The notes under the pieces were generated by a model. It searched no databases. It saw only the letters and a list, made by a program, of their open reading frames with translations, and had not been told where the DNA came from. The translations under genes and the position numbers were made by a program. 64,000 nt of DNA, taken from positions 40,796,001 through 40,860,000 of the forward strand of contig NC_083234.1 in assembly GCF_032191835.1 (NCBI RefSeq), given 5' to 3'. This document shows, piece by piece, positions 10,948-50,891 of the stretch; position 1 is the stretch's first letter, and the number at the start of each line of letters is the position of its first letter. Origin of the DNA: Heteronotia binoei. Lineage: Eukaryota.

Positions 10948-11369
10948 CATGATACAGAGTGGTAAATTTCAGTACTGCAGTCCAAGTTGTGCTCACAATC
11001 TTAGTTCAATCCCGGCAGAAGTTGGGTTCAGGTTCAGGTAGCCATTTCAACTTCTAGTGTCTCGGCCCCACTGATGGACCTCCTGATGGCACCTGGGGTT
11101 TTTGGCCACTGTGTGACACAGTGTTGGTCTGGATGGGCCATTGGCCTGATCCAACATGGCTTCTCTTATGTTCTAATGTTCAAGGTTGACTTAGCCTTCC
11201 ACCTTTTCAAGGTCAGTAAAATGAGTACCCAGCTTTCTGTGGGTAAAGTGTAGATGACTGGGGAAGGCAATGGCAAACAAAAAGTCTGCCAAGAAAACAC
11301 TGTGATGTGACATCACCCCACGGGTCAGTAATGACTAGGTACTTTAAAAGGGGACTACCTTTACCTTTA
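10948..11369 (+). mobile_element. Sauria SINE (Squam1), interrupted
   Basis: cagtactgcag head, caaggttgact..gccttcca, ggtcagtaaaatgagtacccag, ggggaaggcaatggcaaac, and tail ggggactacctttaccttta. Confidence 0.85.
11045..11179 (+). mobile_element. CR1 LINE 3' tail nested in the Sauria SINE
   Basis: ggccccactgatggacctcctgatggcacctgggg...ggcctgatccaacatggcttctcttatgttc; same tail as 29745-29915 and the 67-bp array. Confidence 0.85.
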
Positions 11370-14300
11370 ACTACATGGTACTGTTGCTGTGTGACACACA
11401 CACACCTCAGTTCTCCCTGCTCCTGTTTAGCAGATATGCACTGGCAGTTCCACCCTCAGAACTTAATTCCTAGGCACATGGGGCTCAATTAGTGTTCTTA
11501 GGCCTCCTAACATGGTAGGAGACCTCCTGCTGGCAACTCTTGTTACCCACTGCTACGCCAAGCAATGGCATGAGAAAAATAATTATTTTTAAAAGCTGAT
11601 GCTTTACCATACAGTTTCTGCAGTTTCCTAAAGAGACATGACATCACTTCCATTTTTCCCAGAACTGATGTCATGGCTCATTTGACACTGGTGCCCCCCC
11701 CCCACCACAAGTGCCCACTCCTAAGTTCTCATCGATTGCTGGGCAATCCTAAACCCAGTTCAGGTCAGGACTGTGGTGCATGAGGAGAGAGTGTTTAAGC
11801 CCCTACATGTGCTGTTTTATAAATCTAAAACAGTCCCAGGAAGTCACTGGTTGCTCAATGGAGCATTCCTTCTGGGGAAAATCTTGCTTTGTTTAGACTT
11901 TTGCTCACGGTGATCTCCTGTCTCAGGAGTCAGCATATATTACTACAAAAACAATAATTATTTTTTTAATTCACTGTTTTGATTGGAGACATCCCCAGTT
12001 TACTTGAGAAAAGCATCAAGCTATTGCCAATCACGCTGAAATTCTAGCAACTCTGACATGAAGCAGGGGCATACAAACACTGCAATTGATGGCCAAAACA
12101 GACATGACATTTAAAAACTATGTTAATACCAGCCATTAGAGGGGGGATTTGGATCAAGGTTTGGGAGAAGAAACAGGTCTCAGCAGGATATAACACCACA
12201 CATTCTACCCTCCAAAGCTGCCCTTTCTCCAGAGGGACTGATATCTGTAATACGAAGATTGGTTGTAATTCTGGGAGTTCCCCAGGCTGCACTTGAAAGT
12301 TGGCAACTCAATGCTGGCAACCCTACCATTGGCAGTCTCTCCCACATCTTTCCCCATGCAACCCTACTGCTGGCAGCCTCTCCCCATGCTAGCTGTCTCT
12401 TCCCATGCTAGAGGGAGAGACTGCCAGCTGCCTGCCCCTCACTGAAGGAGGGGAGAAAAGAAGAAGAGCAGGCTCCTACCACCACTCATGCCTTCCCCAT
12501 CCAGGCTCAAGTAGCTGGCTTCTGGCAGTGGCTTCTGCCTACCTTGCATGGGGCAAGTGCCATTCATTGTCGGGCCTGGTAGGGAGGCAGTGATTCTGGA
12601 ATCCTATCATGGACTTTTGCCCAGGGCCCCAGAATCCCTATGACACCCCCTGTCCAAGAGCACCACTTTTTATTTTCCCCCATGGGAGTGAATGAAAGCC
12701 ATTCTTAAATATTTTCAAGGAAGTTGAGAAGTCAGAAACATCACTAGAACAGGCAAAGCTCCCCCCGCCACTGACCCCAGCCACCTAATTATTACTATCT
12801 CAGGTTCTCATGTAACTCTTTTGGTGTTGTGGTCTCAATATTTAACCTTCCACTCATGATAGGCTAACAGAAAACAATACAAATATTTAGAAAACTAAAA
12901 ATCAGTTTATTTAAAAATTTTATTTGTGTTTGTGTGTGTGTGTACACTTGTGGCAAACTGTACTAGTCTGGATTGAGGTAGAGTAGTAACAGAGGCTTCA
13001 TATAGTCAGGGCCTATTTTTTTCTTGAGTTAGAATTCTGTTTTGGGGGGATTCCAGTTCACTTCCACAGAAAGAACTCCATGCAAACAGAAAACTAGCAC
13101 AATAGAGAGAAATGTTCTACCCTTTCCCTTTGCTTGTTAGTTTGGTATTCTGTATGCAGGGAGTCTTCGGTATGCAGCGGATCTGTGCATGTTCTGTACT
13201 CAGTAGCACATAGCACCCTTTGTGGAGTCTCTGACAGTCTTCACTGTGCTATGTACTCTTCTCCCAACAACCCAGAACACAGTGAATGACCAAATGTTAT
13301 GACCTTTGAATTCATATGAATCCACATATGAATGCTAACACTACAAAATGAACTTTGTGAATGCCCCAATCCAGATACTTGGCTGGATCCAATCAGTTTT
13401 TTCTGATGGTAAAAAAAGAAGGAATCCTCTCTGATCATCCAAAATGGCCATACTGGGGTTCATGGGACTTGTGTGAAAACAAAAGACCCATGCAACAGGA
13501 GCTAGAGCAAGGAAGGGAATTGGGTGAGATTGAGCAAAAAAGTTGGCTGGATCCAACCCACGTATTCCCTATTTCTTTAACCTATACAACTGAAAGGTCA
13601 AAGTCACATTTACTGAGTTACTTTTGAGATTCTCCATTATGTTCTATCTATTCTTTCAGATTTTCTCTCTGTGAAACTATACCTCACAGAACTTTAATTC
13701 TGAAATTTGAACATGTACTGCCACAGCATTCAGTTCCATGATTAATTTGCATCTTCTAACCCCATAAATGAATATGAATTGATAAAACACTGCAAAAAGC
13801 AAACTTAATGTACTCATATCTAGGATTATATCAAGATTCTTTGATGTTGGGTTTTACTGATGCACACATTCAGTAGTGAAATACCATCCAGACAACATTT
13901 ATCTATATTCATGTGAAGATTACTGCTTTTTTTTACAGTGTTTTGCACATGCACATTATTGGGGAGAGGAAAACACAGATTAACAGAAGGAACAGAAAGA
14001 TGTGATAAACTGTGCACGCACAGTGCTTTGTGCAAAATTCAGATATAAAAACAGTGGGTAATTTCTAATGCATCAACTCAGCATTGAAACCAGACATAGT
14101 AATTCAGAACTTCAAACTTCAGTGTGAAGTATAGATGAAGACAATTTCACAAACATGCCTAGACTGAGATTGTTAGATTCTGGATATTCACAGCATATAT
14201 TATATCTTTCCTTTTAAAAGAAGCAGCTAAAAAATATCAAGGGTTGGAGAGTTGCCCAGTTTCAGAATGACATGTACTGAAACTGTAAGTGAGCTAAGGT

Positions 14301-20989: not shown

Positions 20990-21673
20990 AAGTAGATTTT
21001 GACCAGAGGAGCACAATTCAAGCATGGCTCCTTCAGACATGTGGATCCCAGGTTGTGAAAAGCTTGAGCTGAGTCTAGAAGCAGATAGGCAGCTGTTGCA
21101 ATTGTTTCAGAACAGGTGTTACATGTTCAAAGCAGCTTGCTTCAATTAAAATGCATTTTTCACATATTGCAGCTTGTGAGTTGACCTTAAGGGCAACCCG
21201 GAGAAGTAGAGCACATTACAATATTCCAGTGCTGAAGCTACAGTGGCATGGTTCAACTGGAAGAGTCCAAGTTGGGAGACAAGTTATGAATAAGATGTAA
21301 ATGAAAGAAGATGTTCCTATCAATAGAACAGATCTGCTTGTCTGAATCCAACAGCATTATATAATGTGCTGAAGATGCTGACCCTTTTCTAGGGTTGTCC
21401 TTATCAGAACATCAACCTTCCCACCCAGTATCATCTCCATCTTGACTGGATTCAGTTTCAAATTGTTACCCATCAACTACTTTTTGAGAGCAGCTTCTGG
21501 AGACTAGATAGAGAAATACAAAGATGGTTGTGATCTGCATAGTGGTGACAGCCAAGCACAAAGCTATGGATTGGGGTCATTCAGCAGCCTGACATAAATA
21601 TCAAAAAGCAAAGAGGTAAGAGAATTGACCCTTGAGAGTCTTGTGAGGAAATGACCCCTCTTTCCCCTAATAT
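20990..21673 (-). mobile_element. Old L2 LINE RT-region fragment (host of the LTR)
   Basis: Minus strand gives QGSILLPLLFDIYVRLL...HSFVLGCHHYAD, resembling the L2 RT GVPQGS...YADD region. A plausible continuation (LQWL-CF...RTQKV-like) lies at about 27100-27200. Confidence 0.6.
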
Positions 21674-22378
21674 TGTAGTCACCAGCATGGTTGCCAGGGC
21701 GCCTGGAGAAGTGAGCTCACACACACCTTTGGACAGAGGGTGTGAGCAAAACCATCCAGGGACTAAAAGGGACTCATGTGTGCAAACAGCCTAAGTGTGC
21801 AGGCATTCTAAACCGGTATAGAGTGCTTGCCAACGTGCACGGACGTTTCCCCGTCACTGCGTGAGTCCGCCATGGTAGGGAAGAAGCTGCGCCGCCACGG
21901 AGCTATCCAGGCGACCGGTGTTGAAGCGTTGAGCATGGAATCCACTGTGTCTCGCTAACACCGCTTGTAGCCATCTTCCTGCCAGGCTGGACTTCATTCC
22001 TTCATAGTGGGAAGCTCACGTATACACCCTGAGTCACCCTTAGCCCGCAAGCAACCCATTTGCCCCATGAATGGATTAATAGCTCAACTGTTAGTCCTGA
22101 TTGCCTAGCAATACCCTAAACGATAACTCCTGCCCAGAAGATGATGAGAAAAGAGGAAGAACATCTCCTGTCACAACCAAGTCTTTTGTCTACACCGGGG
22201 ATACCTAGGTCAATATTTGATTCCCTATTGTCACCTTCCCAGATAAACCCACTTAATCCCAAGTACCTAGCCATTTCCATACTGACACCCTTGGAGCCGC
22301 CCCAGGTAGGGTGACCATAATGTCTGAAGGCCAGCCAGGGACACGGGGGGGTGCGCTGCGCGCAAAGCGCGCGTGCCG

Positions 22379-22690
22379 CCGGAAACAGGAAGTGACGTCA
22401 CTTCCGGTGACGTCACTTCCGGTGATGTCATGCCACCGCCGGAAACAGGAAGTGACGTCACTTCCGGTGACGTCACTTCCGGTGATGTCATGCCACCGCC
22501 GGAAACAGGAAGTGACGTCACTTCCGGTGACGTCACTTCCGGTGATGTCATGCCACCACCGGAAACAGGAAGTGGCATCACTTCCTGTGACATCATTTCC
22601 CCCGCGTCACCTGCCGGAAACAGGAAGTGACTTCACAGCACTTCCTGTGACGTCCCCAAAAATCCCCCAAATATCACCGCCGGAAACAAT
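22379..22690. repeat. 60-bp tandem repeat rich in ETS (CCGGAAGT) and CRE (TGACGTCA) motifs
   Basis: Three near-perfect units of ccggaaacaggaagtgacgtcacttccggtgacgtcacttccggtgatgtcatgccaccg, then two degenerate units. Confidence 0.95.
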
Positions 22691-23593
22691 TTTGCTCTCA
22701 AATCCTGTATATACTTCATCAGTATATGGGATAAGGCACTTTCTCAACTGTGCTGCATAATGCAGCCTATTTATTTTGTCCTGTTGGCTCTGTTGGCTCT
22801 ATCTGCGCCACCTTCATCACTTTCGGGGTGTGGATCCCCCAGTGGGGTGGTCTCCCGACTCCCTCCGCTGACTGTTTCTGATAGCCCTGCGCCCCCTCTT
22901 TCATTTGATATGTGTCCCGTGCGGGTGCCACCCTCCCGCCGGGAGATGCCGCAAAATGAGCCCCCTTGAGGCTTATGGCGGCAGGGCTCGGGGGAAGCGA
23001 GCTAGACTGCTGTTCTTTTGAGGGGTTATAGAGTGTTTCGAGCCCGTCCCTGTGGCATCGGTCCCATCGTTGTGGGACCCAGGGGGCCGGCGCAGCGGCA
23101 CGCCGAAGCAGCCTGTCACTAATAACACCGGTCAAGATGCAGGACAGGAACCTGGAAGTGACCGACAGGCTGCTTCAGCGTGCTGCTGCGCCGGCCCCCT
23201 GGGCCCCACAACGATGGGACCGATGCCACAGGGACGGGCTCGAAACACTCTATAACCCCTCAAAAGAACAGCAGTCTAGCTCGCTTCCCCCGAGCCCTGC
23301 CGCCATAAGCCTCAAGGGGGCTCATTTTGCGGCATCTCCCGGCGGGAGGGTGGCACCCGCACGGGACACATATCAAATGAAAGAGGGGGCGCAGGGCTCT
23401 CAGAAACAGCCGGCGGAGGGAGTCGGGAGACCACTCCACTGGGGGATCCACACCCCGAAAGTGATGAAGGTGGCGCAGATAGAGCCAACAGAGCCAACAG
23501 GACAAAATAAATAGGCTGCATTATGCAGCACAGTTGAGAAAGTGCCTTATCCCATATACTGATGAAGTAAATACAGGATCTGAGAACAAAATT
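22688..23593. repeat. Long inverted repeat: ~430-bp arms, 46-bp spacer
   Basis: Arms 22688-23117 and 23164-23593 differ at about 10 positions by manual count. The ORF track shows near-identical peptides on opposite strands (22767-23135 and 23137-23514). Confidence 0.95.
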
Positions 23594-23665
23594 GCACTAG
23601 AAGACACAAACACAAAGCTCCCTTACACTGAATCAGTGCTTGGGTCCACCAAAGTCAGTATTGTC

Positions 23666-24258
23666 ACATAAGAGAAGCCCTGTTGGATCAGGCCAGTGGC
23701 CCCTCCAGTCCAACACTCTGCGTCACATAATAACATAAGAGAAGCCCTGTTGGATCAGGCCAGTGGCCCATCCAGTCCAACACTCTGCGTCACATAACAA
23801 CATAAGAGAAGCCCTGTTGGATCAGGCCAGTGGCCCATCCAGTCCAACACTCTGCGTCACATAACAACATAAGAGAAGCCCTGTTGGATCAGGCCAGTGG
23901 CCCATCCAGTCCAACACTCTGCATCACATAACAACATAAGAGAAGCCCTGTTGGATCAGGCCAGTGGCCCATCCAGTCCAACACTCTGCATCACATAACA
24001 ACATGAGAGAAGCCCTGTTGGATCAGGCCAGTGGCCCATCCAGTCCAACACTCTGCGTCACATAAGAACATAAGAGAAGCCCTGTTGGATCAGGCCAGTG
24101 GCCCATCCAGTCCAACACTCTGTGTCACATAAGAACATAAGAGAAGCCCTGTTGGATCAGGCCAGTGGCCCATCCAGTCCAACACTCTGCATCACATAAC
24201 AACATAAGAGAAGCCCTGTTGGATCAGGCCAGTGGCCCATCCAGTCCAACACTCTGCA
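23666..24258 (-). repeat. 67-bp tandem array of CR1 3' terminal sequence (at least 9 units, runs into gap)
   Basis: Units start at 23666, 23733, 23800, 23867, 23934, 24001, 24068, 24135 and 24202. The unit is the reverse complement of the CR1 tail seen singly at 11045-11179 and 29745-29915. Confidence 0.93.
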
Positions 24259-24816
24259 NNNNNNNNNNNNNNNNNNNNNNNNNNNNNNNNNNNNNNNNNN
24301 NNNNNNNNNNNNNNNNNNNNNNNNNNNNNNNNNNNNNNNNNNNNNNNNNNNNNNNNNNNNNNNNNNNNNNNNNNNNNNNNNNNNNNNNNNNNNNNNNNNN
24401 NNNNNNNNNNNNNNNNNNNNNNNNNNNNNNNNNNNNNNNNNNNNNNNNNNNNNNNNNNNNNNNNNNNNNNNNNNNNNNNNNNNNNNNNNNNNNNNNNNNN
24501 NNNNNNNNNNNNNNNNNNNNNNNNNNNNNNNNNNNNNNNNNNNNNNNNNNNNNNNNNNNNNNNNNNNNNNNNNNNNNNNNNNNNNNNNNNNNNNNNNNNN
24601 NNNNNNNNNNNNNNNNNNNNNNNNNNNNNNNNNNNNNNNNNNNNNNNNNNNNNNNNNNNNNNNNNNNNNNNNNNNNNNNNNNNNNNNNNNNNNNNNNNNN
24701 NNNNNNNNNNNNNNNNNNNNNNNNNNNNNNNNNNNNNNNNNNNNNNNNNNNNNNNNNNNNNNNNNNNNNNNNNNNNNNNNNNNNNNNNNNNNNNNNNNNN
24801 NNNNNNNNNNNNNNNN
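24259..24816. other. Assembly gap (558 N)
   Basis: Run of n characters. Confidence 1.
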
Positions 24817-24949
24817 CCCCCCCCCGCTTTCGGCCCCCTTACCTTATTCCAGGGCGGCGGAGTCCAGCGGCGGCGGCGGCGGGGAGTCCTCCGGCGGCGG
24901 CGTCGCGGCGAGGGAGGGAGGGAGGGAGCTGCCGGCGCTGGCCTCCAGG

Positions 24950-26215
24950 GACCAGCGCCGGCTGCTCCGCGGCTTCCCCACGGCCTCCGCTGCTCCCTGG
25001 AGGCCCTCCAGAGACTCTGGAGGGCCTGCAGGGACCAGCGGAGGCCGCGGGGAAGCCTTCGCTGGCCGGCGCTGGTCCCAGAAGGCCTTCCAGAGGCTCT
25101 GGAAGGCCTTCCGGGACCAGCGCCGGGTGCCCCGCGGCTTCCCCGCGGCCTCCGCTGGTCCCTGCAGGCCCTCCAGAGAGTCTGGAGGGCCTACAGGGAC
25201 CAGCGGAGGCCGCGGGGAAGCCTTCGCTGGCCGGCGCTGGTCCCCGAAGGCCTTCCAGAGCCTCTGGAAGGCCTTCCGGGACCAGCGCCGGGTGCCCCGC
25301 GGCTTCCCCGCGGCCTCCAATGGTCCCTGCAGGCCCTCCAGAGAGTCTGGAGGGCCTACAGGGACCAGCGGAGGCCGCGGGGAAGCCTTCGCTGGCCGGC
25401 GCTGGTCCCCGAAGGCCTTCCAGAGCCTCTGGAAGGCCTTCCGGGACCAGCGCCGGGTGCCCCGCGGCTTCCCCGCGGCCTCCGCTGGTCCCTGCAGGCC
25501 CTCCAGAGACTCTGGAGGGCCTGCAGGGACCAGCGGAGGCCGCGGGGAAGCCTTCGCTGGCCGGCGCTGGTCCCGGAAGGCCTTCCAGAGGCTCTGGAAG
25601 GCCTTCCGGGACCAGCGCCGGGTGCCCCGCGGCTTCCCCGCGGCCTCCAATGGTCCCTGCAGGCCCTCCAGAGAGTCTGGAGGGCCTACAGGGACCAGCG
25701 GAGGCCGCGGGGAAGCCTTCGCTGGCCGGCGCTGGTCCCCGAAGGCCTTCCAGAGCCTCTGGAAGGCCTTCCGGGACCAGCGCCGGGTGCCCCGCGGCTT
25801 CCCCGCGGCCTCCGCTGGTCCCTGCAGGCCCTCCAGAGACTCTGGAGGGCCTGCAGGGACCAGCGGAGGCCGCGGGGAAGCCTTCGCTGGCCGGCGCTGG
25901 TCCCGGAAGGCCTTCCAGACGCTCTGGAAGGCCTTCCGGGACCAGCGCCGGGTGCCCCGCGGCTTCCCCGCGGCCTCCAATGGTCCCTGCAGGCCCTCCA
26001 GAGAGTCTGGAGGGCCTACAGGGACCAGCGGAGGCCGCGGGGAAGCCTTCGCTGGCCGGCGCTGGTCCCCGAAGGCCTTCCAGAGGCTCTGGAAGGCCTT
26101 CGGGGACCAGCGCCGGGTGCCCCGCGGCCTCTCCGCGGCCTCCGCTGGTCGCTGGAGGCCCTCCAGAGTCTCTGGAGGGCTTCCAGCGACCAGCGGAGGC
26201 CACGGAGAGGCCTCC
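24950..26215. repeat. GC-rich self-palindromic 165-bp satellite-like array
   Basis: gggaccagcggaggccgcgggg recurs at 25031, 25196, 25361, 25526, 25691, 25856 and 26021, with a diverged copy at 26186; each unit contains its own reverse complement. Confidence 0.95.
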
Positions 26216-29200
26216 ACCACTGCCGCCGGGCCCCGCGCGCGGGCGGGGAAGGCGGGAAGGGAGGGAGGGAGCGTCCCTGCGCGTGCGCAGGGACGCTCCC
26301 TCCCTCACTCCCCGCCTTCCCCGCCCGCGCCCGCGGCCCACCGGCTCCTGGGCTGCCTAAACCGGGACCTTTAATGGTCCCGGTATAGGCAGCCCGGGAT
26401 CCGGGATTGGGTGGCCAGATCCGGGAATGTCCCGGGAGACCGGGACGGTCTGGCCACCCTAGCCCCAGGCCTTGTCGCAACCTGGAAGTTTCCAGGTGCC
26501 CAGGACGAAGGTGAAGTTCATTGGTCAAAGCAAACACCCAATTGGGTGTCACCACGGGACTCGCCATTGGCTCTGCTAATGTCCAGCCTTCGTGCTCATC
26601 ACAGAGCCTCCCATTCCTCCTCCCCGTTGCCTCCCATCCCCTAAGGGCTCAGGTGAGGCCTTATAACCTGTGGACTAGCTACCCACAGGTGTGCCTCTAA
26701 CAGTATCCCAGTTCCGCTGTCTAGATCCATCCCCAATTCTGGCCACAGTTTTGGGTCCATTTCCCCTGTCCTCTTATGTCGCCATTGGGACCTTCCTCGA
26801 AGACTACGATGGTAAATATTACCCTGTGTGTCTACCCTTATATGTTCCTCTATCAATCTATCTGTGTTTCTTAGGCCTGTGTGAATGTGTGATTGTATTG
26901 TATTTTTATCTTGTGTGAAAGAACTATATTATTCTAAATAAATTACAATTGGTTTTACTAAATTAGAGTCCTTTTATTGAGCATTACCCTCTGGATGGTT
27001 GAGCCTGGTATATATTGGTAAAAAGATTCCTAGTGAGCCAGGTGCCCACCTAACTAATTCCCCAACCTCGTTTTGAGGGCATTTAGGCTTACAGTCTGCA
27101 CAGAACAAGGACCAGGCAGGACTAATCTGGTTTTAGAAAAACTTTCTGTGTCCTACTGAGTTAAAAACATGATAACCACTGGAGAACCACCCCCTAATTC
27201 TTACTGACAACAATATATCATGATCTATTGTGTCAAAAACTACCAAAAGATCTAAATGAATCAATAAAGAGTTTATTTTGTTCATCTACAAAGATCGATC
27301 TTCAGAGCTATTAAAGCTGTTTCAATCCCCAAAACCAGGTCCGAGGCCCAGCTGAAATGGATCAATGTCATCCTAAATCTGAACTTGCCTTTCCTCAGTC
27401 TGTTTAATCATCTTTGAAGAATGACACTCATAAATAACTAAGTTCTCAGAATAATGAGCATTCTATCTCTTTAATGCAACTTCTAGCACACTGCCCTTTT
27501 CTTTGTCCAGTGCTTTTAGGACAATGGTAATTCCTTTGTACTTACCAATAGCTACTGAGAATTATTATATTTCCTTATTTCCTTCCCTTGAAATTATATG
27601 TATATTGACATGAAGGAGGAGAATCAATATTGCATAGGTCACCCTGCTCCAAACAGTAAGATGAAATCTAGTGAAATCTATCAGAGTGTGACTGAAAGGC
27701 ATGAAAAAGGAAGGAACTTCATACAGGGCAAAGAAAGTTGGATTGTTGAACCCGTTACCAATAGTTGGTGTAACCTAGAATGCTACAGAAGCAGCACAAA
27801 GCTGTTAGTACACAGCTGTGCCTGGTCACAATCTTGTTGTGCACACTTGGTACCACATGGAGATGCTATGCTCTACTTCCCAGTACAAGACTGGCCACAC
27901 ATTTCTTTTTTAAAAAAGCTGTGTGCACAATGAAAGCTAGAAACCTTTTCAAGTCTAATGCGTGTTTACAAATTTCTAAATTTTGCACAAGCCAAAAGAT
28001 TCTAATAAAACTGAGCCTGCTGAAGACCACAGAAGACAAATTCATCTTCAAAGCTTTCTAGCACATATGAAGAACACGTCAACTCTGTTGTTTTCATTAT
28101 TTTCTTCTTACGCCTTTCGTCTCCTCTCCCACCAGAAGAGGTACCACTTTGTGTTCTCAGCTGTTTTGGCCCAGATCTCATGGAATGACTAAACTACCCT
28201 TTGCTCTATACCTCCACCTCCACATTTACTGGCAGCACTGTAACGATAGATCAGAGAGACAACTATAATGAACTATCTCCAAATTGCATTAATAAGAGGC
28301 AGCTGCTCTGGAAGCTAATAATGTAAAAAAACTTAGTCATGTTTTGAAGAACTTAATAGACCAAGTCCTTTCCATAGCCCGTCTATCACACATATTTCAT
28401 GTCCCTTTATATGTGAATTTACTCACACTCTCTCACTTGCTGCACTGCTTTCTTTCCACCCACTTAAGTAAGATGCAATGCAATGACTTCACTTGATTGG
28501 TTGGACAGCTGCCATTCTACTGCTGATGGCCAGCTTTAGCCTGGAGTGTCAACTGAAACTGCAGCTTCATATTCTATATAAATAGATTCCTTCCTCCCCC
28601 AGCATATACTGCTTACTATGAAAGCTATTTGAGAGCTCTGCATAGTTTTGTATTGTGTCTTGCTGCTATTTCAGTAGTTGCTTTTCAACAGCTTTGCAGC
28701 AGTTGCCATACTAAGACTCAGCAGACACAGAATGCTTTCAGTTTTGCTACAGCTTGGACTCTGGAGGAGCTTAACACCAAATCAAGGTGGGCATAGGTAA
28801 GTGTTGGGCTCCCTTTACAGATTCTAAATTTTGCCTGGATCTTGTTGGCGGCTTCCTTTGGCAATAATCATTTGATGGTTAACAAATGTCTATTACTGTG
28901 TTGTTGCCATAATGCAATAACATTTAGGTTCCTCTTGCCCAATCCACTGCAGGCAAGACTCCCTCAACTTGGACCATTCCCAGTACATCTGGTATCCTCT
29001 ACAATCCAATTATTTCTGAAAAATTTCTTACATGCTAAACTGGTCATGTGATTGTCTCAACACACATCCAGATTGCAAGTCAGTACGTTCCCACTCCACG
29101 CTGCAAGTCAGCAAGTTCTCACTTGAAACAATGACAGCTGGCTTACCACAGCCAAACTGAGCCAAGAAAGGTCACATGAACAGGCTGCTCAAGACCTCCC

Positions 29201-29744: not shown

Positions 29745-29915
29745 GGCTGTACCACAAGAGGCCTCACATATTTCAGCCTTGGTGCTTGGGGGGAGCAACA
29801 GCGGGAGGGCTTCTAGTCTCCTGGCCCCACTGATGGACCTCCCTATGGCACCTGGGTTTTTTGGCTACTGTGTGATCCAGTATTGGCCTGATCCAATATG
29901 GCTTCTCTTATGTTC
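29745..29915 (+). mobile_element. CR1 LINE 3' end fragment
   Basis: ggagcaacagcgggagggcttc...ggcctgatccaatatggcttctcttatgttc. Confidence 0.85.
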
Positions 29916-30027
29916 TTGTGTCATTCTGTATTTATTAGGGAGGGAACCCTTTTTGGTCCCATATTGATTTGTTAAAAGTTGCAAGTTGTAGCATGAGCCT
30001 GGTACATATATAATATGCTTGACCTCT

Positions 30028-32320: not shown

Positions 32321-33313
32321 ACTTGTCAGCCAAACATGTATACTAATTTCTGGTTTTCCAGGATTCATGGAGTCTCAAGTTAAAAGGATCCCATGTACTA
32401 AGGCTGTAAAGACTTTTGAGAAGATTGGGGCCTGAGACCACAGACTGCCATTGCCAGCCAGAGCAAACGATATTGACAGATGCTGTAACTATACCTTAAA
32501 AGTTCTGTTAGTGTGGCCTGTTATAGTTGTGCAAACTCCTTCTCAGTATCTCTAGAAATTAAATCTCTGAAGGTCAAATGACAAATGATGTTGGAGCTTC
32601 ATGATGAGACATCCAGACATGTAATTTGGTCTTTAAAAATTGCCACAGGAAGCCTGCTGGATCTATAGCTCTAGGGAATATATAGGTCTATACTAGGGGT
32701 GTGCATTCGGTTTGGCTGAACCGAATAAACCTCCAAATCCCCCCTGATTCGGTATACGGCGCCATATACTTCCGAATCCAATTGGAAGCCATTATATGGG
32801 AGCCATATATGGCTCCCAGTATACTTCCGAATCAATATTTGGAAGTATATGGAAGTCCATAGAAAAGGCAAGAAAGGAGCTTCTGCAGCCTCAGGGGAGC
32901 TGCTTGTCTCCTTTCCCGCCTTTGGAAGCCTTTTCCCGCCTCTCCCATAGCCTCCCTGGGATCAGAGGGGGGGAGGGGGAGAGGAGCCCCAGCAGTTAAT
33001 CCAAAGCATGCATTTGCAAAATGCATTGCAAATGCATGCTTTGCAGAGCTGTTGTGTAGCTGATGGCTGGGCTAATCCCCCAGCCATCAGCAATATTGTT
33101 GTTCTTTTGTTTACTTGGGTATCCAAGCAAACAGTGTTCTCTGGCCAATCACAGAACAGTGGTATTTTTTGAAACTGTTCTGTGTAGGGTCAGAGAACCT
33201 TTTTAAGGAATCTGCCTGGCTGGACTCCATTCCATTGCTGCTGTGTTGGTGTGTGAAAGAGACTGTGCTGTGCTGGCCCTTGGCCTCAGCTGCTGATGCT
33301 CTCTCTCAGCCTT

Positions 33314-33524
33314 ATATGAACATATGAAGCTGCCTTATACTGAATCAGACCCTTGGTCCATCAAAGTCAGTATTGTCTTCTCAGACTGGCAGCGGCTCTC
33401 CAGGGTCTCAAGCTGAGGTTTTTCACGCCTATTTGCCTGGACCCTTTTTTGGAGATGCCGGGGATTGAACCTGGGACCTTCTGCTTCCCAAGCAGATGCT
33501 CTACCACTGAGCCACCGTCCCTCC
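33314..33524 (-). mobile_element. Young tRNA-derived SINE (Squam2-like) nested in the hAT
   Basis: Minus strand GGTGGCTCAGTGGTAGAGC (A box), GGTTCAATCCCCGG (B box), tail TATAAGGCAGCTTCATATGTTCATAT. Confidence 0.9.
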
Positions 33525-34019
33525 ATTCTTGTCCCAGCCTTGCCTGACCTGCCTGGAGAAGAGAAGACATCTAAGGTAAGACAGTCTTGGGGTTCTTGTT
33601 TTTATTTTAGTTAGTAAAAGGACTTTTTAAAACTCAGAGTCCCTTTACTTATCCAGATTTGGGTGGTGGGTACTGGGTAGCTTATTTGGGGTTAGGGTTA
33701 GGGGGTTCTGCTGGGGGTGGGGGCCTGGTGTGGGGGGGTTGCCAATTTGCCCATATCTTACTTTAGTGAGAGAATTTTTAAAAGTGCAGTGTCCTTTTAC
33801 TTTTCCTGATTTGGGTGGTTTGGATTTCTTGGGTTTAGGGTGAAGTTTTTTTTGGGGGGAGGGGTTGGTAAAGTTCCTGTATTGTTAAAAGTCAAGTTTT
33901 TTACTGTTTTAAAAGGATTCTGTGTTTGATTTGTTGCTGCTGTGTTGTGCTGCTGTTGTTCCTTGTCTCTTCTGGTTCTGGTTCTTGTGCGGGGGGAGGC
34001 TGTTTGGCCTAATTTTCAT

Positions 34020-34320
34020 TGTTAAAAAGGTCACTTTTTTAACAGTTAAGTTTCTTGGCCTTTTCTCAGTGATTTGGATCTGTTGTTGTTGGTTTTGCAT
34101 CCTGTCCTGTTGTCTCTTTTCCTGTTTCTGTTTTTTTTTTTGGGGGGGGGTGTTGTTGACTGATTTGGCCTGAGGTTTTTTATTGTTAAAAAGGTCGCTT
34201 TTTTAACAGTTGAGTTTCTTGGCCTTTTCTCAGTGATCTGTTTGGATCTGTTGTTGGTTTTGCATCCTGTCCTGTTGTCCCTTTTCCTGGTTCTGGTTTT
34301 TTTTGGGGGGGGGGGGGTGT
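34020..34320. repeat. ~163-bp T/G-rich direct repeat (2 copies) inside the hAT
   Basis: gttaaaaaggtc(a/g)ctttttaacagtt...gcatcctgtcctgttgtc...tttttgggggggg at about 34021 and 34184. Confidence 0.85.
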
Positions 34321-35032
34321 TAAAAGTTACGTTTCTTTCTGTCACGTTTTGGTTTTTTTAATTACCTATGGTTGGTGTGGGGGTTGGTGTGTGGGCTGTG
34401 TGGGGTGGGTCACTTTCATGTTTTTATAGAGTTATTTTTGGAGTCTGAGGGTGCTTTCGGTTTGGCTAGGGCCATTAAATAGGCTGCCCCACTAATAAGG
34501 ATGTTTTTAGGGATTGTGCTTAAAAAAAATTAATCCAATTTAGGGCTTTATATTCTTTCAAAATTCAACCAGGCCAGATAGGGGCGATTTAAAAAGATTT
34601 TAGGTTTCTCATAAAAAAGGCAGCATGACTACTGGGCCACATCAGGCTCCCTTTTAAAGAGACTAGGGTTGCAGTGCATCTTGCTTTCAGCCACTGAAAG
34701 CTGGTGCATCCTTAGATGTCCATAGGGTAAACCACAGCTTCTCTCTAGTTATAGGGGACACCTAGTTTGCAAGTAAATCCAGTTTGTCCCAGGATCTAGT
34801 TAGGAGAACTTTAACTAGGAGGATATAACAAGGATTGCCTTCATCTCAAGGTAGCCTAACCCAAACCCAAAGAAGGACAGGTTAGGGACCAAAAAACCAA
34901 ACAAACAAGTTTTGGTGGGAGGGTTTTTAAAAAGAAGTCAGGGCATCTGTTGGTTCAGGTGTAGTGTAGTAAGTTAGGTTTGAAAAAAAACCCACTCTCA
35001 GTTCAGGTTGCGTGAGACTAGCCAAGGGTGAC

Positions 35033-37021
35033 ATGAGTGACAGGCAGCAGAAGAGGGGCCCTGGCGGCAAGGCCAAGGAGAAGACTAGAGGGGTAGAGGG
35101 GAGGGGGAGGACCCAGTTCCCCCACACACACCTGTGCGTAGGGCTACTCCACAGCCGCCTTCCAGCACTCCAACCGCTGGCCAGAGTGTGATGAAGAAGT
35201 CCCACCTTGGGCTCTTCATCAAGGCTGCTGCTGGGGCACCCCCAGCAAAGGTGCCATTAGGTGCTGGCACTGAGCAGGGGTCTGCTGCTCATGCAGTCTC
35301 TCCTCCAGCTGATGTTGCTCGGCCTCAGCAGCCGGAGGAGGAACAGCAAGAGCAGCCCTCCTTGGAGATGAGCTTTGGGGACAGTTTTCTGTCCAAAACG
35401 ATCACCCTAAGGAGGGTGTAGAGTGTCGTGCAGGAGCTGGAGGAGAAGCTGGTTGAGAAGGACCAGCCCCCTTCTTCGGTTCCTTCAGGCACCAGCAGTC
35501 CTTCAGGGGATGGCCAGGAGGGGAGGCCGCATGGGGTGGAAGAAATGGAGACACATGAGGTCAGCTTGGGCATCCATACACCTCCAAAGTCTGGAAGCAT
35601 TTCCGACATGGAGGATCCACACTATGCGCAGTGCCAGCTATCATTGGGCCTTGCTGCACGCCGAAGCAGTCAACGCACCACACATGGCGGACACTCTCGG
35701 AGCCATCCTCTCACAGCAGTTAGAGGGCTGGGTAGGCAGCAGGGACGTTGCCACGGACTTCATGGTGACTGATGGTGGCTCCAACATCAAGGCGGTTGTC
35801 CAGCGTCAGGGCCTAAAACGCCTTCCTTGCATGGCCCACCTTCTCCACCTCGTGGTTAAGGATGCATTGGGCCAGATGAAAAGCCAGGATCGTCGGTACC
35901 TAGCCGCAACCCATGAATACTGACTTCTGCTCCAGAAGTGTCAGCACATCACGGGTCACTTCTCACGCAACAATATGGACTTGTATCTGCTACGTGAGAA
36001 ACAGACACTGACAGGCGTGCCAGGGCATCGCCTGATCAGTGACGTCAGCACACGCTGGAACTCCACCTGTGCCATGCTGGAGCGCATGGTGGAGCAGAGA
36101 GCAGCCCTGGATGCCTTTGCCTCTAAGACAAGGGTCTTTCGGGATGAGAACCGTCTCACCCAAGAGGATTGGGTCATCATTTCTCAGACTGTGGAGGTTC
36201 TTGGGCCCTTCAAGACCCACACAGAAATGCTGTCATCTTGACACGGCAAGCATCGCACTGGTCATCCCCATAGTCCACATGGCCCATGAGGTCCTGGCCT
36301 CGTTTCTAGTGCCAGCTCAAGGCTGTGCAGATGTTCTTCCAGCAATGTGTGCCCTGGTTGTTAGGCTGCAGGAAGGACTTGAGGCCCACTTTCAAACTTT
36401 CACCCAGGATAAGGTCTACATGATGGCGACCATGTTAGACCTACGCCTTAAGGCACGATCGCTGAGCAGGCCAATGAGCTCAATCGCTGGCAACACGAGT
36501 TCTCCCAGAAGGTTGAGTGCTGCAGACTCAGGGCAGGCCCAGTGCCGGTAGCTGTGGAGGAAGGGGGTGGAAGCAACTCATCTGCCACTTCCACTGCTGT
36601 TCATCCCCAACCTCCCCGGCTAGGCAGTGTTTCCCACCAGACTCATGCCAAGAAGAGTGCTGAGATGACACTCATCGGGCAGCTTGCTGGCCGCTCTGGG
36701 AGCGGTAGGCCCCTGAGAGCGGAGACAGGTGCTGCAATGGTGAGGGACTATCTTTCGGAGCCCAACGAGTCGCAGGAAACGTCTCCTTTGGACTACTGGG
36801 TGATGAAGGAGGGGGTGCGGCCGGCCCTCTCCTCCGTGATCAAGGCGTTCTTCTCATGCCCACTGACAAGCGTGCACAGCAAGCATGTCTTTTTGCGTAT
36901 GGGTGACATTGTCTGCCCACATCGCAATCGCCTGCAACCCTGGACAGTTGAGCAGTTGGTCTTCCTGAAGGTCAACTTGCCTCTGTTTGGCTCCCCGAAT
37001 GTAGACTTTGAGAGTGAATGA
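35033..37021 (+). pseudogene. hAT transposase pseudogene (BED finger start, RNase-H core remnants, hATC dimerisation domain)
   Basis: Motifs across frames: SKVWKHF...EDPHYAQC (BED), VTDGGSN, CMAHLLHLVV (CxxH), LISDVSTRWNST, ATMLDLR, PLDYW...CPLTSVHSKHVF...HRNRLQPWTVEQLVFLKVN (hATC). It has several frameshifts, premature stops and a deletion near 35640. Confidence 0.93.
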
Positions 37022-37799
37022 AGTGAGCACCTACTAGTGCCTGCATCCTCTCTTGGCCCATGCTTGGAAGGTGGTTGTAAAATGCTCTCCCACTAAGCAT
37101 AGACTAGAGTCCAAAGACAGCCCAAAAACTCACAAATTGATTGGCAGTGCACCCCCCCACCCCTCATCCATCCCCAAAACAAAAGTGAATACTGATTTAA
37201 AATCTGCAAAGCAATCCAAATTTCCCCAGTCCCCATCCACACATGCCTAATAATACTATGTCCCATCCCAGATGAGATGGGACTCCGTCGGGCCCCCCCC
37301 CCCCCTGCACCCGACGGCTGAGACAGGATGCCGCCAGGAGCCCCCCCCCCCGCCCCCCCCCCCCGCAGCTCCCAAGGCTCCAGCATACGTCCTGGCCGCC
37401 TGACGGAGCCCGCCCCTCTGAGATGCCTGCCAGAGCAGGGAACCAATGGGCCCGCCCTTAGGCCTGGGTGAAGTGGCCAAGCCCTGGCTGTGGCCGCGGA
37501 AGGGAGAGGGCAGGAACACCACCCGGCCGAGAGGGTGGGGGAGGCAGGAGCCCTGAGCCCAGACACAACCACAACGCCCCAACCCACTCGACTGCCTCAC
37601 ACAATCTGAGGCCCTCCCGGTGATCTTCCTCATTTGGGGTGCAACTCTGGGTCACCTCCTCATGGTGCACCCTGGGTAATGCAAAAGAGCCTGGACCAGC
37701 CAACCATGCATCACTCAAGGTAAGTCTAAATGCTTCTTACTTTGTGTCAGATACAGAATGATGTGGAGCTAAGTGTGGTCCACCGCTTCTCTTGCTTGA

Positions 37800-38085
37800 G
37801 AGTTGTGTTGTTTGGGGCAAGGCTGGAGAGCTGGCATCTGTAGATTGTTCTGTGGCAGGGAAGCTGGCATCTGGGTGAGACACCGAGAACCAGCATGCTT
37901 GTTGTGCTTGGCCAGCTCTCCCTGCATTGTTTGGGGCAGGGCTGGAGAGCTGGCATCTGTAGATTGTGTGTTCTGTGGCTGGGAAACTGGCATCTGGGTG
38001 AGAGACCCAGAACCAGCATGCCTGTTGTGCTTGGCCAACTCTCCCTGTGTTGTTTGGGGCAGGGCTGGAGAGCTGGCATCTGGGA
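37800..38085. repeat. ~120-124-bp direct repeat (2.3 copies) inside the hAT
   Basis: tgtttggggcagggctggagagctggcatctg recurs near 37808, 37928 and 38052. Confidence 0.9.
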
Positions 38086-38269
38086 TTGCTGCAGCTAGGT
38101 CTGCAGAGCAGACCTTGAGCAGATTGTGTTTTGTGTGGCAGTGACGTTGGCAACTGAGTTTATATTGGATCCAGGCCAGCAGGGTTCATAGAGTAGATAG
38201 ATGGATGTAGTGCATTTCAGTCCTATAGAGATTCTCTTGTGTGAAGTTAGGTTTGGCTTTGGGTGCCCC

Positions 38270-39000
38270 AGGAATTGGACCCCCTGGTCCAATCTTTTTT
38301 TGGCCTTGTGGGTTTTGTGTGGGACAGTGCCCTGAAGCTGCACAGCAGTTTCTCCTCAAAAACCCCTGCTCCCCAGAGCCACTTTTCCCACTACAATTAC
38401 AGTGGGGAAAGTGGCTCTAATTGGTTTTTTCTCATCATTGGGAACAGTGTTCCTTTTGGGGTGCCCACAGATGGGTGCAGCCTTTTGGAACCAGGGGGGT
38501 TGCATGCGGGGGAGTCCCCTGAAGCTGCCCTGCAGTTTTGGGGCCTCTCCCTCAAACCCCCCTCTGGCCAAAGACACTTTCCCCACTGCAATTATAGTGG
38601 AGGAAGTGGCTAATTGGGCTTTCCCCAGCATTGGTGGCGATGGGCCTTTTGGGGAGCCCAAAGACAGGGACCCCCTGGCCCAATCTTTTTGGGATTTGGT
38701 GGTTTTGTAGGGGAGAATCCCCTGTGGGTTCCCTGCAGTTTTGGGGGCTCTCTCTCAGACCCCCTGCCCCCCAGTAGTCTCTAATTATGCCCTGTGTTGC
38801 CATTGATTTCAATGGCCCATAGTGTATAATGGAGGGATAGGGGCACCCTCTTTGGTTTCCCTGGAATGGGACCCCCTAGCCCAATCTTTTTGGGACTTGG
38901 GGGGGTTGTAGGGAGTGTCCCCTGCAGGTCCCCTGCAAATTTTGGGGCTCTCCCTCAAACCCCCTCCCCTCCAGGTGGCTTCAAATATACCCTATTTTGC
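38270..39000. repeat. Diverged ~195-200-bp subterminal repeats of the hAT (about 4 copies)
   Basis: ggaccccc.ggcccaatctttttt...cctgcag(t)tttgggg.ctctccctcaaacccc recurs near 38277, 38470 (partial), 38668 and 38868. Confidence 0.75.
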
Positions 39001-50657: not shown

Positions 50658-50863
50658 TAGGGTTGCCAACTCTGGCTAGGGAAATACCTGGAGATTTGGG
50701 GGATGGAGCCTGTGGACACGAGGGTTTGGAGAAGGGAGAGACCTCAGCAGAGTATGCCTTACAGTCCATCCTTCATTTCCTCCAGGGGAACAGATCTCTG
50801 TAGTCTGGAGATCAGTTGTCGTTCTGGGAGATCTCCAGGTTCCACCTGGAGACTGGCAACCCA
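50658..50863 (+). mobile_element. hAT MITE, TAGGGTTGCCA family
   Basis: tagggttgccaac ... ctggcaaccca; flanks (t)ggggaag / ggggaag. Confidence 0.8.
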
Positions 50864-50891
50864 GGGGAAGTGAAAGTCAAGGGCAGAGGTG

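What the first reader, a model, noticed from the sequence alone, without database searches (positions are those of the whole stretch)
22306..26461. hAT-ended composite carrying palindromes, a satellite and captured retroposon DNA inside an LTR
Seen: hAT-type termini with a near-perfect 8-bp TSD enclose, in order, an ETS-CRE array, a 900-bp palindrome, a diverged Squam2 tail (23615-23665), a CR1-tail concatemer, a gap and a palindromic 165-bp array. The two ends share TAGGGTG(A/G)CCA...GGGACA but differ subterminally. Inference: this is a Pack-type or macro-transposon hAT that moved unrelated genomic cargo and acts as a nursery for tandem repeats. It is the most unusual structure in the window; the gap prevents proof that it is one unit.
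Basis: partly seen in the sequence, partly recalled or inferred. Interest (0 to 1): 0.8.

Follow-up and report, generated by a model that had tools for sequence, protein, structure and literature searches.

The report
Cargo-filled hAT transposon inside a solo LTR
A roughly 4-kb non-coding "cut-and-paste" (hAT-type) transposon, filled with repeat arrays, hairpins and retroposon scraps, jumped as one piece into an old retroviral LTR of a reptile-like genome. This kind of element is already described in lizards and maize, so it is a good example rather than a new kind.

Summary
The element runs 22307-26461, not from 22306. Its 11-bp inverted ends are TAGGGTGaCCA and TAGGGTGgCCA. The 8-bp target-site duplication GCCCCAGG is perfect.

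It lies in a 1.29-kb solo LTR (21642-27093; TG..CA ends; 4-bp duplication GTCT on both outer sides). A second solo LTR of the same family (54272-52856, minus strand) runs uninterrupted across the homologous site. Both ends therefore entered in one event, and the two contigs either side of the N gap belong to one locus.

- a 60-bp ETS/CRE array
- a 431+46+431-bp palindrome
- a 51-nt SINE-tail piece
- a 67-bp array of a LINE/SINE 3' end
- a 165/330-bp array of near-perfect hairpins

Nothing in the element codes for protein.

No gene fragments were found, so "Pack-type" in the strict sense is not met. No inner termini are visible, so a macrotransposon is untested. No tool reached other copies, so whether the cargo travelled with the ends stays open.

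The closest precedents are Anolis hobo-N elements and maize Ds2/Ds-l4. The same window also holds a 6.5-kb hAT with arrays and a nested SINE. Verdict: a new member of a known kind, of moderate-to-low interest.

The parts
21642..22306 (+). Host solo LTR, left part. It starts with TG. Its 4-bp duplication GTCT lies at 21638-21641.
   Evidence: Aligns at 72-80% with the paralogous solo LTR 54272-52856 (minus strand). Boundaries and duplications were read directly.
22299..22306 (.). Left copy of the 8-bp target-site duplication GCCCCAGG.
   Evidence: Identical to 26462-26469. The paralogous LTR has a single homologous site.
22307..22375 (+). Left terminus: 11-bp inverted repeat TAGGGTGACCA (22307-22317) plus 58 bp of unique GC-rich sequence. 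It has no CCGGGA motifs.
   Evidence: It has no significant fold of its own (z -0.5).
22376..22686 (+). ETS/CRE array. A 15-bp sub-unit is nested in a 60-bp unit. There are three identical 60-mers, then two decayed units. It holds 12 CCGGAA/TTCCGG cores.
   Evidence: TRF, register print, motif counts against shuffles. CpG observed/expected is 1.02.
22687..23594 (.). 908-bp palindrome: 431-nt arms at 97.7% identity and a 46-nt spacer (23118-23163). It has no duplication of its own and no coding signal.
23595..23665 (-). Fragment of the 3' tail of a tRNA-derived SINE. The SINE sense strand is the minus strand. No CpG remains.
   Evidence: 86% over 51 nt to the SINE copy at 33327-33377. The tRNA-like head of that copy lies at 33450-33522, minus strand.
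23666..24258 (-). 67-bp tandem array (at least 8.8 copies, 97%) made of the terminal 67 nt of an interspersed LINE/SINE-type repeat, including its 8-mer microsatellite end. It runs into the gap, so its true length is unknown.
   Evidence: Units differ mainly at the single CpG (CG/CA/TG). CpG observed/expected is 0.10.
24259..24816 (.). Assembly gap of 558 N with estimated length. It was not filled or looked up.
   Evidence: Continuity of the locus across it is inferred from the flanking LTR halves and both duplications.
24817..24939 (.). GC-rich (79%) unique segment. It starts with a C run, then (GGC)n-like and (AGGG)n motifs.
24940..26213 (.). 165-bp array, 7.7 copies, organised as a 330-bp higher-order repeat. 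Alternate units are 99-100% identical. Each 165-mer is two near-perfect hairpins with arms of about 43-47 and 30 nt. It carries 8 of the window's 12 CCGGGAC/GTCCCGG heptamers.
   Evidence: hairpins -65.6 and -44.5 kcal/mol, z -17 and -11.
26214..26342 (.). GC-rich palindrome with a stem of about 55 bp, centred at 26284.
   Evidence: -72.4 kcal/mol, z -13.
26343..26461 (-). Right subterminal region and terminus. It has two hairpins and 8 CCGGGA/TCCCGG motifs in 119 bp. The 11-bp inverted repeat lies at 26451-26461. An inverted copy of the terminus sits at 26407-26419.
26462..26469 (.). Right copy of the 8-bp target-site duplication GCCCCAGG.
26470..27093 (+). Host solo LTR, right part. It ends in CA. 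Its 4-bp duplication GTCT lies at 27094-27097.

Best explanation
This is a single non-autonomous hAT-type DNA transposon. It has 3,597 readable bases plus a gap, about 4.2 kb as scaffolded. It was cut and pasted in one event into the U3-side interior of a pre-existing solo LTR, duplicating the 8-bp target GCCCCAGG.

It encodes nothing. It must have been moved in trans by a hAT transposase that recognises TAGGGTGRCCA ends, probably together with CCGGRA-type subterminal repeats.

Its interior is a patchwork. Some parts are probably family-own: GC- and CpG-rich, hairpin-forming sequence, namely the right subterminal region, the GC palindrome and the 165/330-bp hairpin array that shares the subterminal heptamer. 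Other parts look like 'filler' DNA of other origin: old, CpG-depleted retroposon 3'-tail pieces and the 908-bp inverted duplication.

The most likely route for the filler is the one accepted for maize Ds2/Ds-l4 and Anolis hobo-N elements. That route is error-prone, template-switching repair of the gap left by excision, which also produces inverted duplications. The arrays then grew by slippage or unequal exchange, favoured by their hairpins.

Shown: one insertion event, hAT-type ends and duplication, non-coding content, the module map, recent local amplification, and one locus across the gap.

Inferred: trans-mobilisation, the origin of the filler before the last jump, and the repair mechanism.
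For: One event:
- Perfect 8/8 duplication and 10/11 inverted ends, against 0.17 such pairs per random window.
- The paralogous solo LTR is collinear across the site, with 11 nt between the same landmarks in both copies.
- The host LTR's own 4-bp duplication GTCT brackets the whole block, gap included.

hAT type:
- 8-bp duplication and 11-bp ends that start TAGGG (the YARNG motif). The Ac/Ds ends are C/TAGGGATGAAA (PMC3260210).
- The same window has a transposase-bearing hAT (Pfam Dimer_Tnp_hAT, 4e-13) with ends TAGGGGTGTGC and a perfect 8-bp duplication. It also has MITEs with ends TAGGGTTGCCA and 8-bp duplications.
- The right end carries 8 CCGGGA motifs in 119 bp.

Non-coding.

Mixed origin of the interior:
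- CpG observed/expected is 0.6-1.0 in the GC modules, 0-0.10 in the retroposon pieces and 0.23 in the window.
- The retroposon pieces match interspersed copies elsewhere in the window.

Family-own origin of the 165-bp array: all 12 CCGGGAC/GTCCCGG heptamers of the window lie in that array or the right subterminal region.

Local amplification: three identical 60-mers and 99-100% identical 330-bp units.

Precedent:
- Anolis hobo_AC and hobo-N elements have 11-bp TAGG... ends and 8-bp duplications. They incorporate genomic DNA containing old CR1, Bov-B and Sauria-SINE fragments (PMC3014272).
- Maize Ds2/Ds-l4 carry filler DNA and share only the 11-bp ends (PMC3260210).
Against: - No second copy of either end or of any GC module exists in the window, and none could be reached in any collection. 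Family membership, trans-mobilisation and 'filler before the jump' all rest on analogy.
- The two subterminal regions are unlike each other. The left one has no CCGGGA at all.
- The duplication GCCCCAGG fits neither the Ac-type (nTnnnnAn) nor the Buster-type (nnnTAnnn) target preference. Those preferences are stated from my own knowledge of Arensburger et al. 2011.
- No transposase with matching ends was found. The 6.5-kb hAT in the window shares nothing with this element except a SINE-tail match.
- The gap hides an unknown part of the interior.
Confidence: 0.7

Rival explanations
1. Accretion in place. A short hAT MITE consisting of just the two ends landed in the LTR. The palindrome, the retroposon tails and the arrays arrived or grew afterwards, by nested insertion, inverted duplication and slippage.
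For: The arrays show very recent amplification that could well post-date insertion. The modules differ sharply in CpG content. The 6.5-kb hAT nearby contains what looks like an ordinary nested SINE.
Against: - The retroposon pieces are only 51-67-nt tail fragments, with no SINE or LINE body and no duplication of their own visible on the readable side.
- They look older than the surrounding modules: CpG-free, and 86-88% identical to other copies.
- The palindrome has no duplication of its own.
- Novick et al. used the same 'older than the carrier' argument to favour capture in Anolis (PMC3014272).
Confidence: 0.2
2. Macrotransposon, or alternative transposition. The left end of one hAT-type element and the right end of a different neighbouring one were used together, moving the ordinary genomic DNA that lay between them.
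For: - The two subterminal regions are unrelated beyond 11 bp.
- The last 55 bp (26407-26461) have both an end and its inverted copy, like a miniature element.
- The interior includes old genomic repeat debris.
- Such events, and the inverted duplications that come with them, are documented for Ac/Ds (PMC3260210; PMC4270019 and PMC9910405 listed).
Against: - No inner terminus for the left element exists anywhere in the 3,597 readable bases at up to 2 mismatches.
- The GC-rich modules are not typical bulk genomic DNA. Their CpG observed/expected is 0.6-1.0 against 0.23 for the window.
- The 165-bp array shares its heptamer with the right end.
- hAT ends are often asymmetric.
Confidence: 0.12
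3. Assembly artefact. The scaffold joins two unrelated contigs across the N gap, so the 'element' is a chimera of two loci or haplotypes.
For: - The left contig breaks inside a tandem array and the right one starts in a C homopolymer. Both are typical places for an assembler to fail.
- The gap length is only an estimate.
Against: - The outer flanks are the two halves of one solo LTR. They abut exactly, apart from an 8-bp duplication, when compared with the paralogous LTR.
- The LTR's own 4-bp duplication GTCT is present on both outer sides.
- A chance join would not reproduce either feature.
Confidence: 0.04
4. Not hAT. The element belongs to another superfamily that makes 8-bp duplications, such as P or some Mutator-like groups.
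For: No transposase is linked to these ends. The duplication sequence does not fit the known hAT target preferences.
Against: - The ends start TAGGG, like Ac/Ds and like the transposase-bearing hAT and the MITEs of this same window.
- The 11-bp end length equals that of Ac/Ds and of Anolis hobo.
- P-type and Mutator-type ends look different (my own knowledge).
Confidence: 0.04

Closest known systems
Anolis carolinensis hobo_AC and its non-autonomous hobo-N1..N15 families (Novick et al. 2010, PMC3014272)
   Same: These are hAT elements of a lizard. They have 11-bp ends that start TAGG and an 8-bp duplication. The non-autonomous forms are 1.3-3.4 kb or more. Their central regions are family-specific and built by incorporating extraneous genomic DNA, which often contains old CR1, Bov-B and Sauria-SINE fragments.
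   Different: The end sequence differs: TAGGCTTGMTC there, TAGGGTGRCCA here. The target preference NTRNNYAN is not met by GCCCCAGG. Tandem arrays, long palindromes and ETS/CRE motifs are not described for them in the passages read. No copy-number data exist here.
Maize Ds2 and Ds-like-4 elements of the Ac/Ds family (Du et al. 2011, PMC3260210)
   Same: They have 11-bp ends (C/TAGGGATGAAA, sharing TAGGG) and an 8-bp duplication. They share little or nothing with the autonomous element beyond the ends and subterminal hexamer repeats. They carry 'filler' DNA of other genomic origin, and about half lie in repetitive DNA such as LTR retrotransposons. Compound elements of several kb occur.
   Different: They are plant elements, and the subterminal motif is AAACGG rather than CCGGRA. 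Some Ds elements carry gene fragments, and none was found here. Mobility by Ac has been tested there; nothing has been tested here.
Ac/Ds macrotransposons and composite insertions from alternative transposition (PMC3260210; PMC4270019; PMC9910405)
   Same: Two hAT ends move a large stretch of unrelated DNA and make an 8-bp duplication. Inverted duplications accompany such events.
   Different: Those cases contain the inner ends of two complete elements. None is visible here, though the gap is unread.
Tandem-repeat-bearing non-autonomous DNA transposons that seed satellites: Tetris in Drosophila virilis (PMC4079207) and DTC84 MITEs in Donax (PMC3879986)
   Same: These are non-coding, modular elements whose interior or long inverted ends hold short tandem arrays. 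Palindromes at unit junctions are proposed as hotspots for copy-number change. The elements are regarded as sources of satellite DNA.
   Different: They belong to different superfamilies or target sites (foldback; AA duplication) and to invertebrates. Genome-wide satellite arrays of the same unit were shown there. No array of these units outside the element is known here.

Membership tests
hAT superfamily (as a non-autonomous member) | 8-bp target-site duplication | tested here: met
   GCCCCAGG is present on both sides, 8/8. The paralogous LTR has one site.
hAT superfamily (as a non-autonomous member) | Short terminal inverted repeats beginning with YARNG | tested here: met
   TAGGGTGACCA and TAGGGTGGCCA, 11 bp, 10/11 match. 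The YARNG criterion is as used in PMC3014272.
hAT superfamily (as a non-autonomous member) | Subterminal short repeats (transposase-binding motifs) at both ends | tested here: inconclusive
   The right end has 8 CCGGGA/TCCCGG motifs in 119 bp. The left end has none, but has 12 CCGGAA/TTCCGG motifs within 400 bp. Whether these are one motif class (CCGGRA) is conjecture.
hAT superfamily (as a non-autonomous member) | Target-site preference nTnnnnAn (Ac group) or nnnTAnnn (Buster group) | tested here: not met
   GCCCCAGG fits neither. This is a statistical preference judged on a single site, so it is weak evidence.
hAT superfamily (as a non-autonomous member) | An autonomous partner with the same ends that encodes a hAT transposase (BED finger, RNase-H-like core, hATC domain) | not testable with these tools
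   The only hAT transposase remnant in the window (35.4-37.0 kb, Dimer_Tnp_hAT 4e-13) sits in an element with different ends (TAGGGGTGTGC). It has no sequence similarity to this one. No genome-wide search was possible.
Pack-TYPE transposon (Pack-MULE/Pack-CACTA sense) | Non-autonomous TIR element whose interior carries fragments of host protein-coding genes | tested here: not met
   Six ORFs were scanned against Pfam and gave only sub-threshold or repeat-driven noise. A phmmer search of the palindrome-arm ORF against 1.84 billion representatives gave one weak hit at E 1.5e-4. Two word-index protein searches gave nothing. A splice-donor-like AAG|GTAAGG on the minus strand near 24840 is unexplored.
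Macrotransposon | Inner termini of the two participating elements present inside the mobile unit | tested here: inconclusive
   No inner terminus at up to 2 mismatches exists in the readable 3,597 bases, except the inverted subterminal copy at 26407-26417. 558 N remain unread.
Macrotransposon | Each outer end also occurs in the genome as part of an ordinary element of its own | not testable with these tools
   This needs the whole genome. There are no other copies in the window or in the collections scanned.
Satellite-seeding transposon ('nursery') | Tandem arrays inside the element with evidence of local copy-number growth | tested here: met
   There are three arrays. The 60-mers are 100% identical over three copies, and the 330-bp units are 99-100% identical.
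Satellite-seeding transposon ('nursery') | The same units found as longer arrays outside the element | not testable with these tools
   None occurs elsewhere in the window. The genome was not available.

The most novel reading that the evidence does not exclude
The element may be a mobile regulatory cassette. In this reading it is a hAT-mobilised, CpG-island-like block whose left arm is an array of intact ETS-CRE composite sites (6 TGACGTCA plus 13 ETS cores). Those sites would double as the transposase's subterminal binding repeats (CCGGRA). Each new insertion would then deliver a ready-made, possibly unmethylated, promoter/enhancer together with hairpin arrays that seed satellites.
Probability: 0.08. 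Interest if true: 0.55.

Novelty: new member of a known kind. Interest (0 to 1): 0.3.

Why it matters
This is a tidy worked example of something already described: hAT elements of squamates, like maize Ds, are not just deletion derivatives. They are patchworks that carry other DNA, here retroposon tails, a long inverted duplication and hairpin arrays. The locus also shows how an interrupted repeat and its own duplications can certify a scaffold join across an unread gap.

If other copies with the same interior exist, the family would spread dense ETS/CRE sites and CpG-rich hairpin arrays around the genome. That would matter for regulatory evolution and for the origin of satellites. With one copy in hand, this remains a possibility only.

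Tried and rejected
- Rfam, E-value mode, 20-29 kb. Only sub-gathering miRNA-model hits appeared, on both strands of the perfect hairpins. I take these as generic hairpin noise.
- Pfam on six internal ORFs, and phmmer of the palindrome-arm ORF against 1.84 billion representatives. No real homology was found.
- The search for homologous proteins with the ORF spanning the left end and ETS/CRE array, and with the ORF spanning the right end. Nothing was found. The hope of reaching other genomic copies through called ORFs failed.
- Exact-pattern scans of metagenome contigs (right-end 20-mer, left-end 24-mer) and viral contigs (right end, ETS/CRE 29-mer, 165-bp hairpin core). All gave 0 hits.
- A full-text search for the MITE end sequence returned only unrelated primers.
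- Palindrome as a long-read adapter artefact. The spacer is 46 nt, close to a SMRTbell adapter's length, but its sequence does not resemble the adapter as I remember it. The arms also differ at 10 sites. Rejected, on memory only.
- ETS/CRE array as adenovirus-like enhancer or ITR sequence. The resemblance is at motif level only, and no viral contig contains the array. Rejected.
- Palindrome as a nested foldback or long-TIR transposon. No duplication flanks it. Unresolved, and not favoured.
- The 55-bp right-end hairpin as a separate MITE. The 8 bp to its left (ATCCGGGA) do not match the 8 bp to its right. Rejected as an independent insertion at this site.
- The 3'-tail hairpin of the 67-bp unit. 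A 7-bp stem exists, but the fold is no better than shuffles (z -0.5), so no structural claim is made. The idea that the array arose from repeated reverse-transcriptase template jumps is less parsimonious than one duplication followed by array growth.
- The 6.5-kb hAT as the autonomous partner. There is no similarity beyond a shared SINE tail, and the ends differ. Rejected.

For the empty-site test, the two LTR flanks were placed side by side only inside a script for alignment. No restored LTR sequence is given. The gap was neither filled nor looked up.

Full report
**What is there.** The window is vertebrate DNA and looks squamate. It contains tRNA-derived SINEs, LINE tails, solo LTRs and hAT elements.

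The region was read directly. The element's left end is TAGGGTGACCA, starting at 22307. Its right end, read as reverse complement, is TAGGGTGGCCA, ending at 26461. The 8 bases outside each end (22299-22306 and 26462-26469) are both GCCCCAGG. The duplication is therefore perfect, and the element starts one base later than the finding states.

I scanned the whole window for pairs of positions up to 10 kb apart with a perfect 8-bp direct repeat flanking a >=10/11 inverted repeat. Apart from self-hits inside the 165-bp array, this pair and four others turned up. Thirty first-order-Markov random sequences of the same size gave a mean of 0.17 such pairs.

**The gap and the question of one locus.** The N run is 24259-24816, 558 N. 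I did not fill it or look it up. The element has no coding frame, so 'in frame' does not apply. The real question is whether both sides belong together, and three observations say they do.

- The flanks are the two halves of one repeat. BLAST of the flanks against the window found a second copy on the minus strand at 54272-52856, 72-80% identical.
- A global alignment of the juxtaposed flanks with that copy is collinear straight through the insertion point. TTGGAGCCgCCCC lies on the left and CAACCTGgAAGTT on the right, with 11 nt between them in both copies.
- Both copies are solo LTRs. Each starts TGTG.GG and ends GGCTTACA. The host copy (21642-27093) is flanked by GTCT on both sides, and the other copy by CAAC on both sides.

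So the host LTR's own 4-bp duplication brackets the hAT-ended block and the gap. A chance scaffold join would reproduce neither the 8-bp nor the 4-bp duplication. I rate a mis-join at about 4%. Because the outer flanks carry one 8-bp duplication, the two outer ends entered in a single integration. Anything hidden in the gap can only be nested inside that unit.

**Interior map.**

- 22307-22375: left terminus, with no notable structure.
- 22376-22686: the ETS/CRE array. A 15-bp sub-unit (GTGACGTCACTTCCG) is nested in a 60-bp unit. The first three 60-mers are identical, and the next two are decayed, mostly at CpGs. The window has 7 TGACGTCA sites, 6 of them here (0.24 expected). It has 6 ACTTCCGG sites, all here (0.42 expected).
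- 22687-23594: a palindrome with 431-nt arms, 10 mismatches and a 46-nt spacer. It starts where a sixth array unit (CCGCCGGAAACA...) breaks off. It has no duplication of its own.
- 23595-23665: a retroposon tail piece. 51 nt match, at 86% (E 2e-12), the 3' tail of a SINE copy at about 33305-33530. That copy's tRNA-like head lies on the minus strand (ARAGORN, 33450-33522).
- 23666 to the gap: at least 8.8 copies of a 67-bp unit at 97% identity. The unit matches, at 88-93%, the common terminus of interspersed copies at 11112-11179 and 29884-29921. It includes two 8-mers of the terminal microsatellite. Units differ mainly at their single CpG (CG, CA or TG).
- 24817-24939: a 79%-GC unique stretch.
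- 24940-26213: a 165-bp array whose alternate units are 99-100% identical, so the true period is 330 bp. Each 165-mer is two related hairpins (-65.6 and -44.5 kcal/mol, z -17 and -11).
- 26214-26342: a GC palindrome (z -13).
- 26343-26461: the right subterminal region. It has two hairpins, and the outer one pairs the terminus with an inverted copy of itself at 26407-26419.

**Coding and RNA checks.** The long ORFs in the GC-rich arrays are open by composition. Pfam gave nothing meaningful. The palindrome-arm ORF gave one weak low-complexity hit among 1.84 billion representatives. Rfam gave only sub-threshold miRNA-model hits on both strands of the hairpins. The element is non-coding.

**Is it hAT?** The 8-bp duplication, the 11-bp ends and the TAGGG start (YARNG) fit. 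Ac/Ds ends are C/TAGGGATGAAA (PMC3260210), and Anolis hobo ends are TAGGCTTGMTC (PMC3014272).

The window supplies its own controls.
- 32694-39182 is a 6,489-bp element with perfect duplication GTCTATAC and ends TAGGGGTGTGC / TAAGGGTGTGC. It has subterminal ATTCGG motifs and a decayed transposase with a hATC domain (Pfam 4e-13).
- 8699-9172 is a MITE with ends TAGGGTTGCCA / TAGGGTTGTCA and perfect duplication TACCCACA.
- 50658-50865 is a related MITE with a 7/8 duplication.

So ends of the TAGGG(G)T type with 8-bp duplications are the local hAT signature.

Points against a clean fit:
- The duplication fits neither known hAT target preference, though this is a single site.
- No matching transposase is known.
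- The subterminal regions differ. The right end has 8 CCGGGA motifs in 119 bp and the left has none. The left side does hold 12 CCGGAA cores, one base different, within its first 400 bp. That may or may not be the same motif class.

**How much is 'unrelated cargo'?** Two lines of evidence divide the interior.

- CpG observed/expected is 0.98-1.02 in the left end and ETS/CRE array, 0.88-0.95 in the GC segments, 0.64 in the 165-bp array and 0.6 in the palindrome. It is 0 and 0.10 in the two retroposon pieces. The window is 0.23 and the host LTR 0.34-0.49. The retroposon pieces look like old genomic DNA. The rest looks young or unmethylated.
- The heptamer CCGGGAC/GTCCCGG occurs 12 times in 64 kb: 4 in the right subterminal region and 8 in the 165-bp array. 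This suggests the array grew out of family-own subterminal sequence rather than being foreign.

The retroposon pieces are bare 3' tails without bodies, and the palindrome lacks a duplication. This fits filler acquired by template-switching repair better than it fits ordinary nested insertions. The same argument was made for Anolis hobo elements, whose embedded CR1, Bov-B and Sauria-SINE fragments are older than the carrier (PMC3014272). I cannot show that the filler was present at the last jump. No other copy of the ends or GC modules exists in the window, and none was reachable by protein-word searches or exact-pattern scans.

**Macrotransposon?** The readable 3,597 bases hold no inner terminus at up to 2 mismatches, other than the inverted subterminal copy near the right end. 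The 8 bp left of that copy do not match the right flank. The idea stays open only through the gap and the unlike subterminal regions. I give it about 12%.

**Comparison and verdict.** The structure works like maize Ds2/Ds-l4: 11-bp ends, filler DNA, and frequent location in LTR retrotransposons (PMC3260210). It also works like Anolis hobo-N families, which incorporate genomic DNA with old retroposon fragments (PMC3014272). As regards its arrays, it resembles tandem-repeat-bearing non-autonomous elements such as Tetris and DTC84 (PMC4079207, PMC3879986).

It is not shown to belong to any named family, and its ends match none of those listed for Anolis. It is also not unique in the window: the 6.5-kb hAT carries a nested SINE and three short arrays.

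I therefore class it as a new member of a known kind. The unusual features are the dense, partly intact ETS/CRE array and the almost perfect hairpin arrays in a CpG-rich context. Interest is 0.3.

The most novel reading still open is a mobile promoter-like cassette whose transcription-factor sites double as transposase-binding repeats. I rate it at about 8%.

Noticed in passing
window 32694-39182: A 6,489-bp hAT element with perfect 8-bp duplication GTCTATAC, ends TAGGGGTGTGC / TAAGGGTGTGC and subterminal ATTCGG/CCGAAT motifs. It has a decayed, frameshifted transposase at about 35.4-37.0 kb (Pfam Dimer_Tnp_hAT 4e-13) and a nested tRNA-derived SINE at about 33305-33530. It also carries three short tandem arrays (34013-34318, 37846-38082, 38308-39017). 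It shares no sequence with the finding's element apart from the SINE tail.
   Followed up: partly
window 8699-9172 and 50658-50865 (also ends at 12315-12325 and 57.6-58.1 kb): A hAT-type MITE family with ends TAGGGTTGCCA. The 474-bp copy has a perfect 8-bp duplication TACCCACA. The 208-bp copy has a 7/8 duplication and a damaged right end.
   Followed up: partly
window 46209-49430: A pair with perfect 8-bp direct repeat TAGAACAG and inverted ends (CAG)GGATGTCCAAC / GGATGTCCATC. The end resembles the TIR listed for Anolis hAT-N5_AC (CAGGSRTGTCCAACCT) in PMC3014272. The interior was not examined.
   Followed up: no
window 52856-54272 (minus strand): A second solo LTR of the same family as the host LTR, 72-80% identical, with TG..CA ends and 4-bp duplication CAAC. 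It has about 100 bp of extra short repeats (CCAGTCCATTGGTCA-like) near 53460-53560 that the host copy lacks.
   Followed up: partly
window 24837-24851 (minus strand): Just right of the gap, the minus strand reads ...CTGGAATAAG|GTAAGGGGG. This is a consensus-like splice donor that follows (GCC)n-rich sequence. It could be a captured first-exon fragment or chance. It is too short and too low in complexity to test.
   Followed up: no
window 62483-63475 (minus strand): A 331-aa ORF with the C-terminal part of a reverse-transcriptase domain (Pfam RVT_1, 6.6e-6, below cut-off). It is probably a LINE remnant. Its 3' end was not compared with the 67-bp unit.
   Followed up: no
window 23118-23163: The palindrome's 46-nt spacer contains CTGGAAGTGAC, an ETS-like core resembling the array unit's CAGGAAGTGAC. 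It may hint that the palindrome and the array share an origin, or it may be chance.
   Followed up: no
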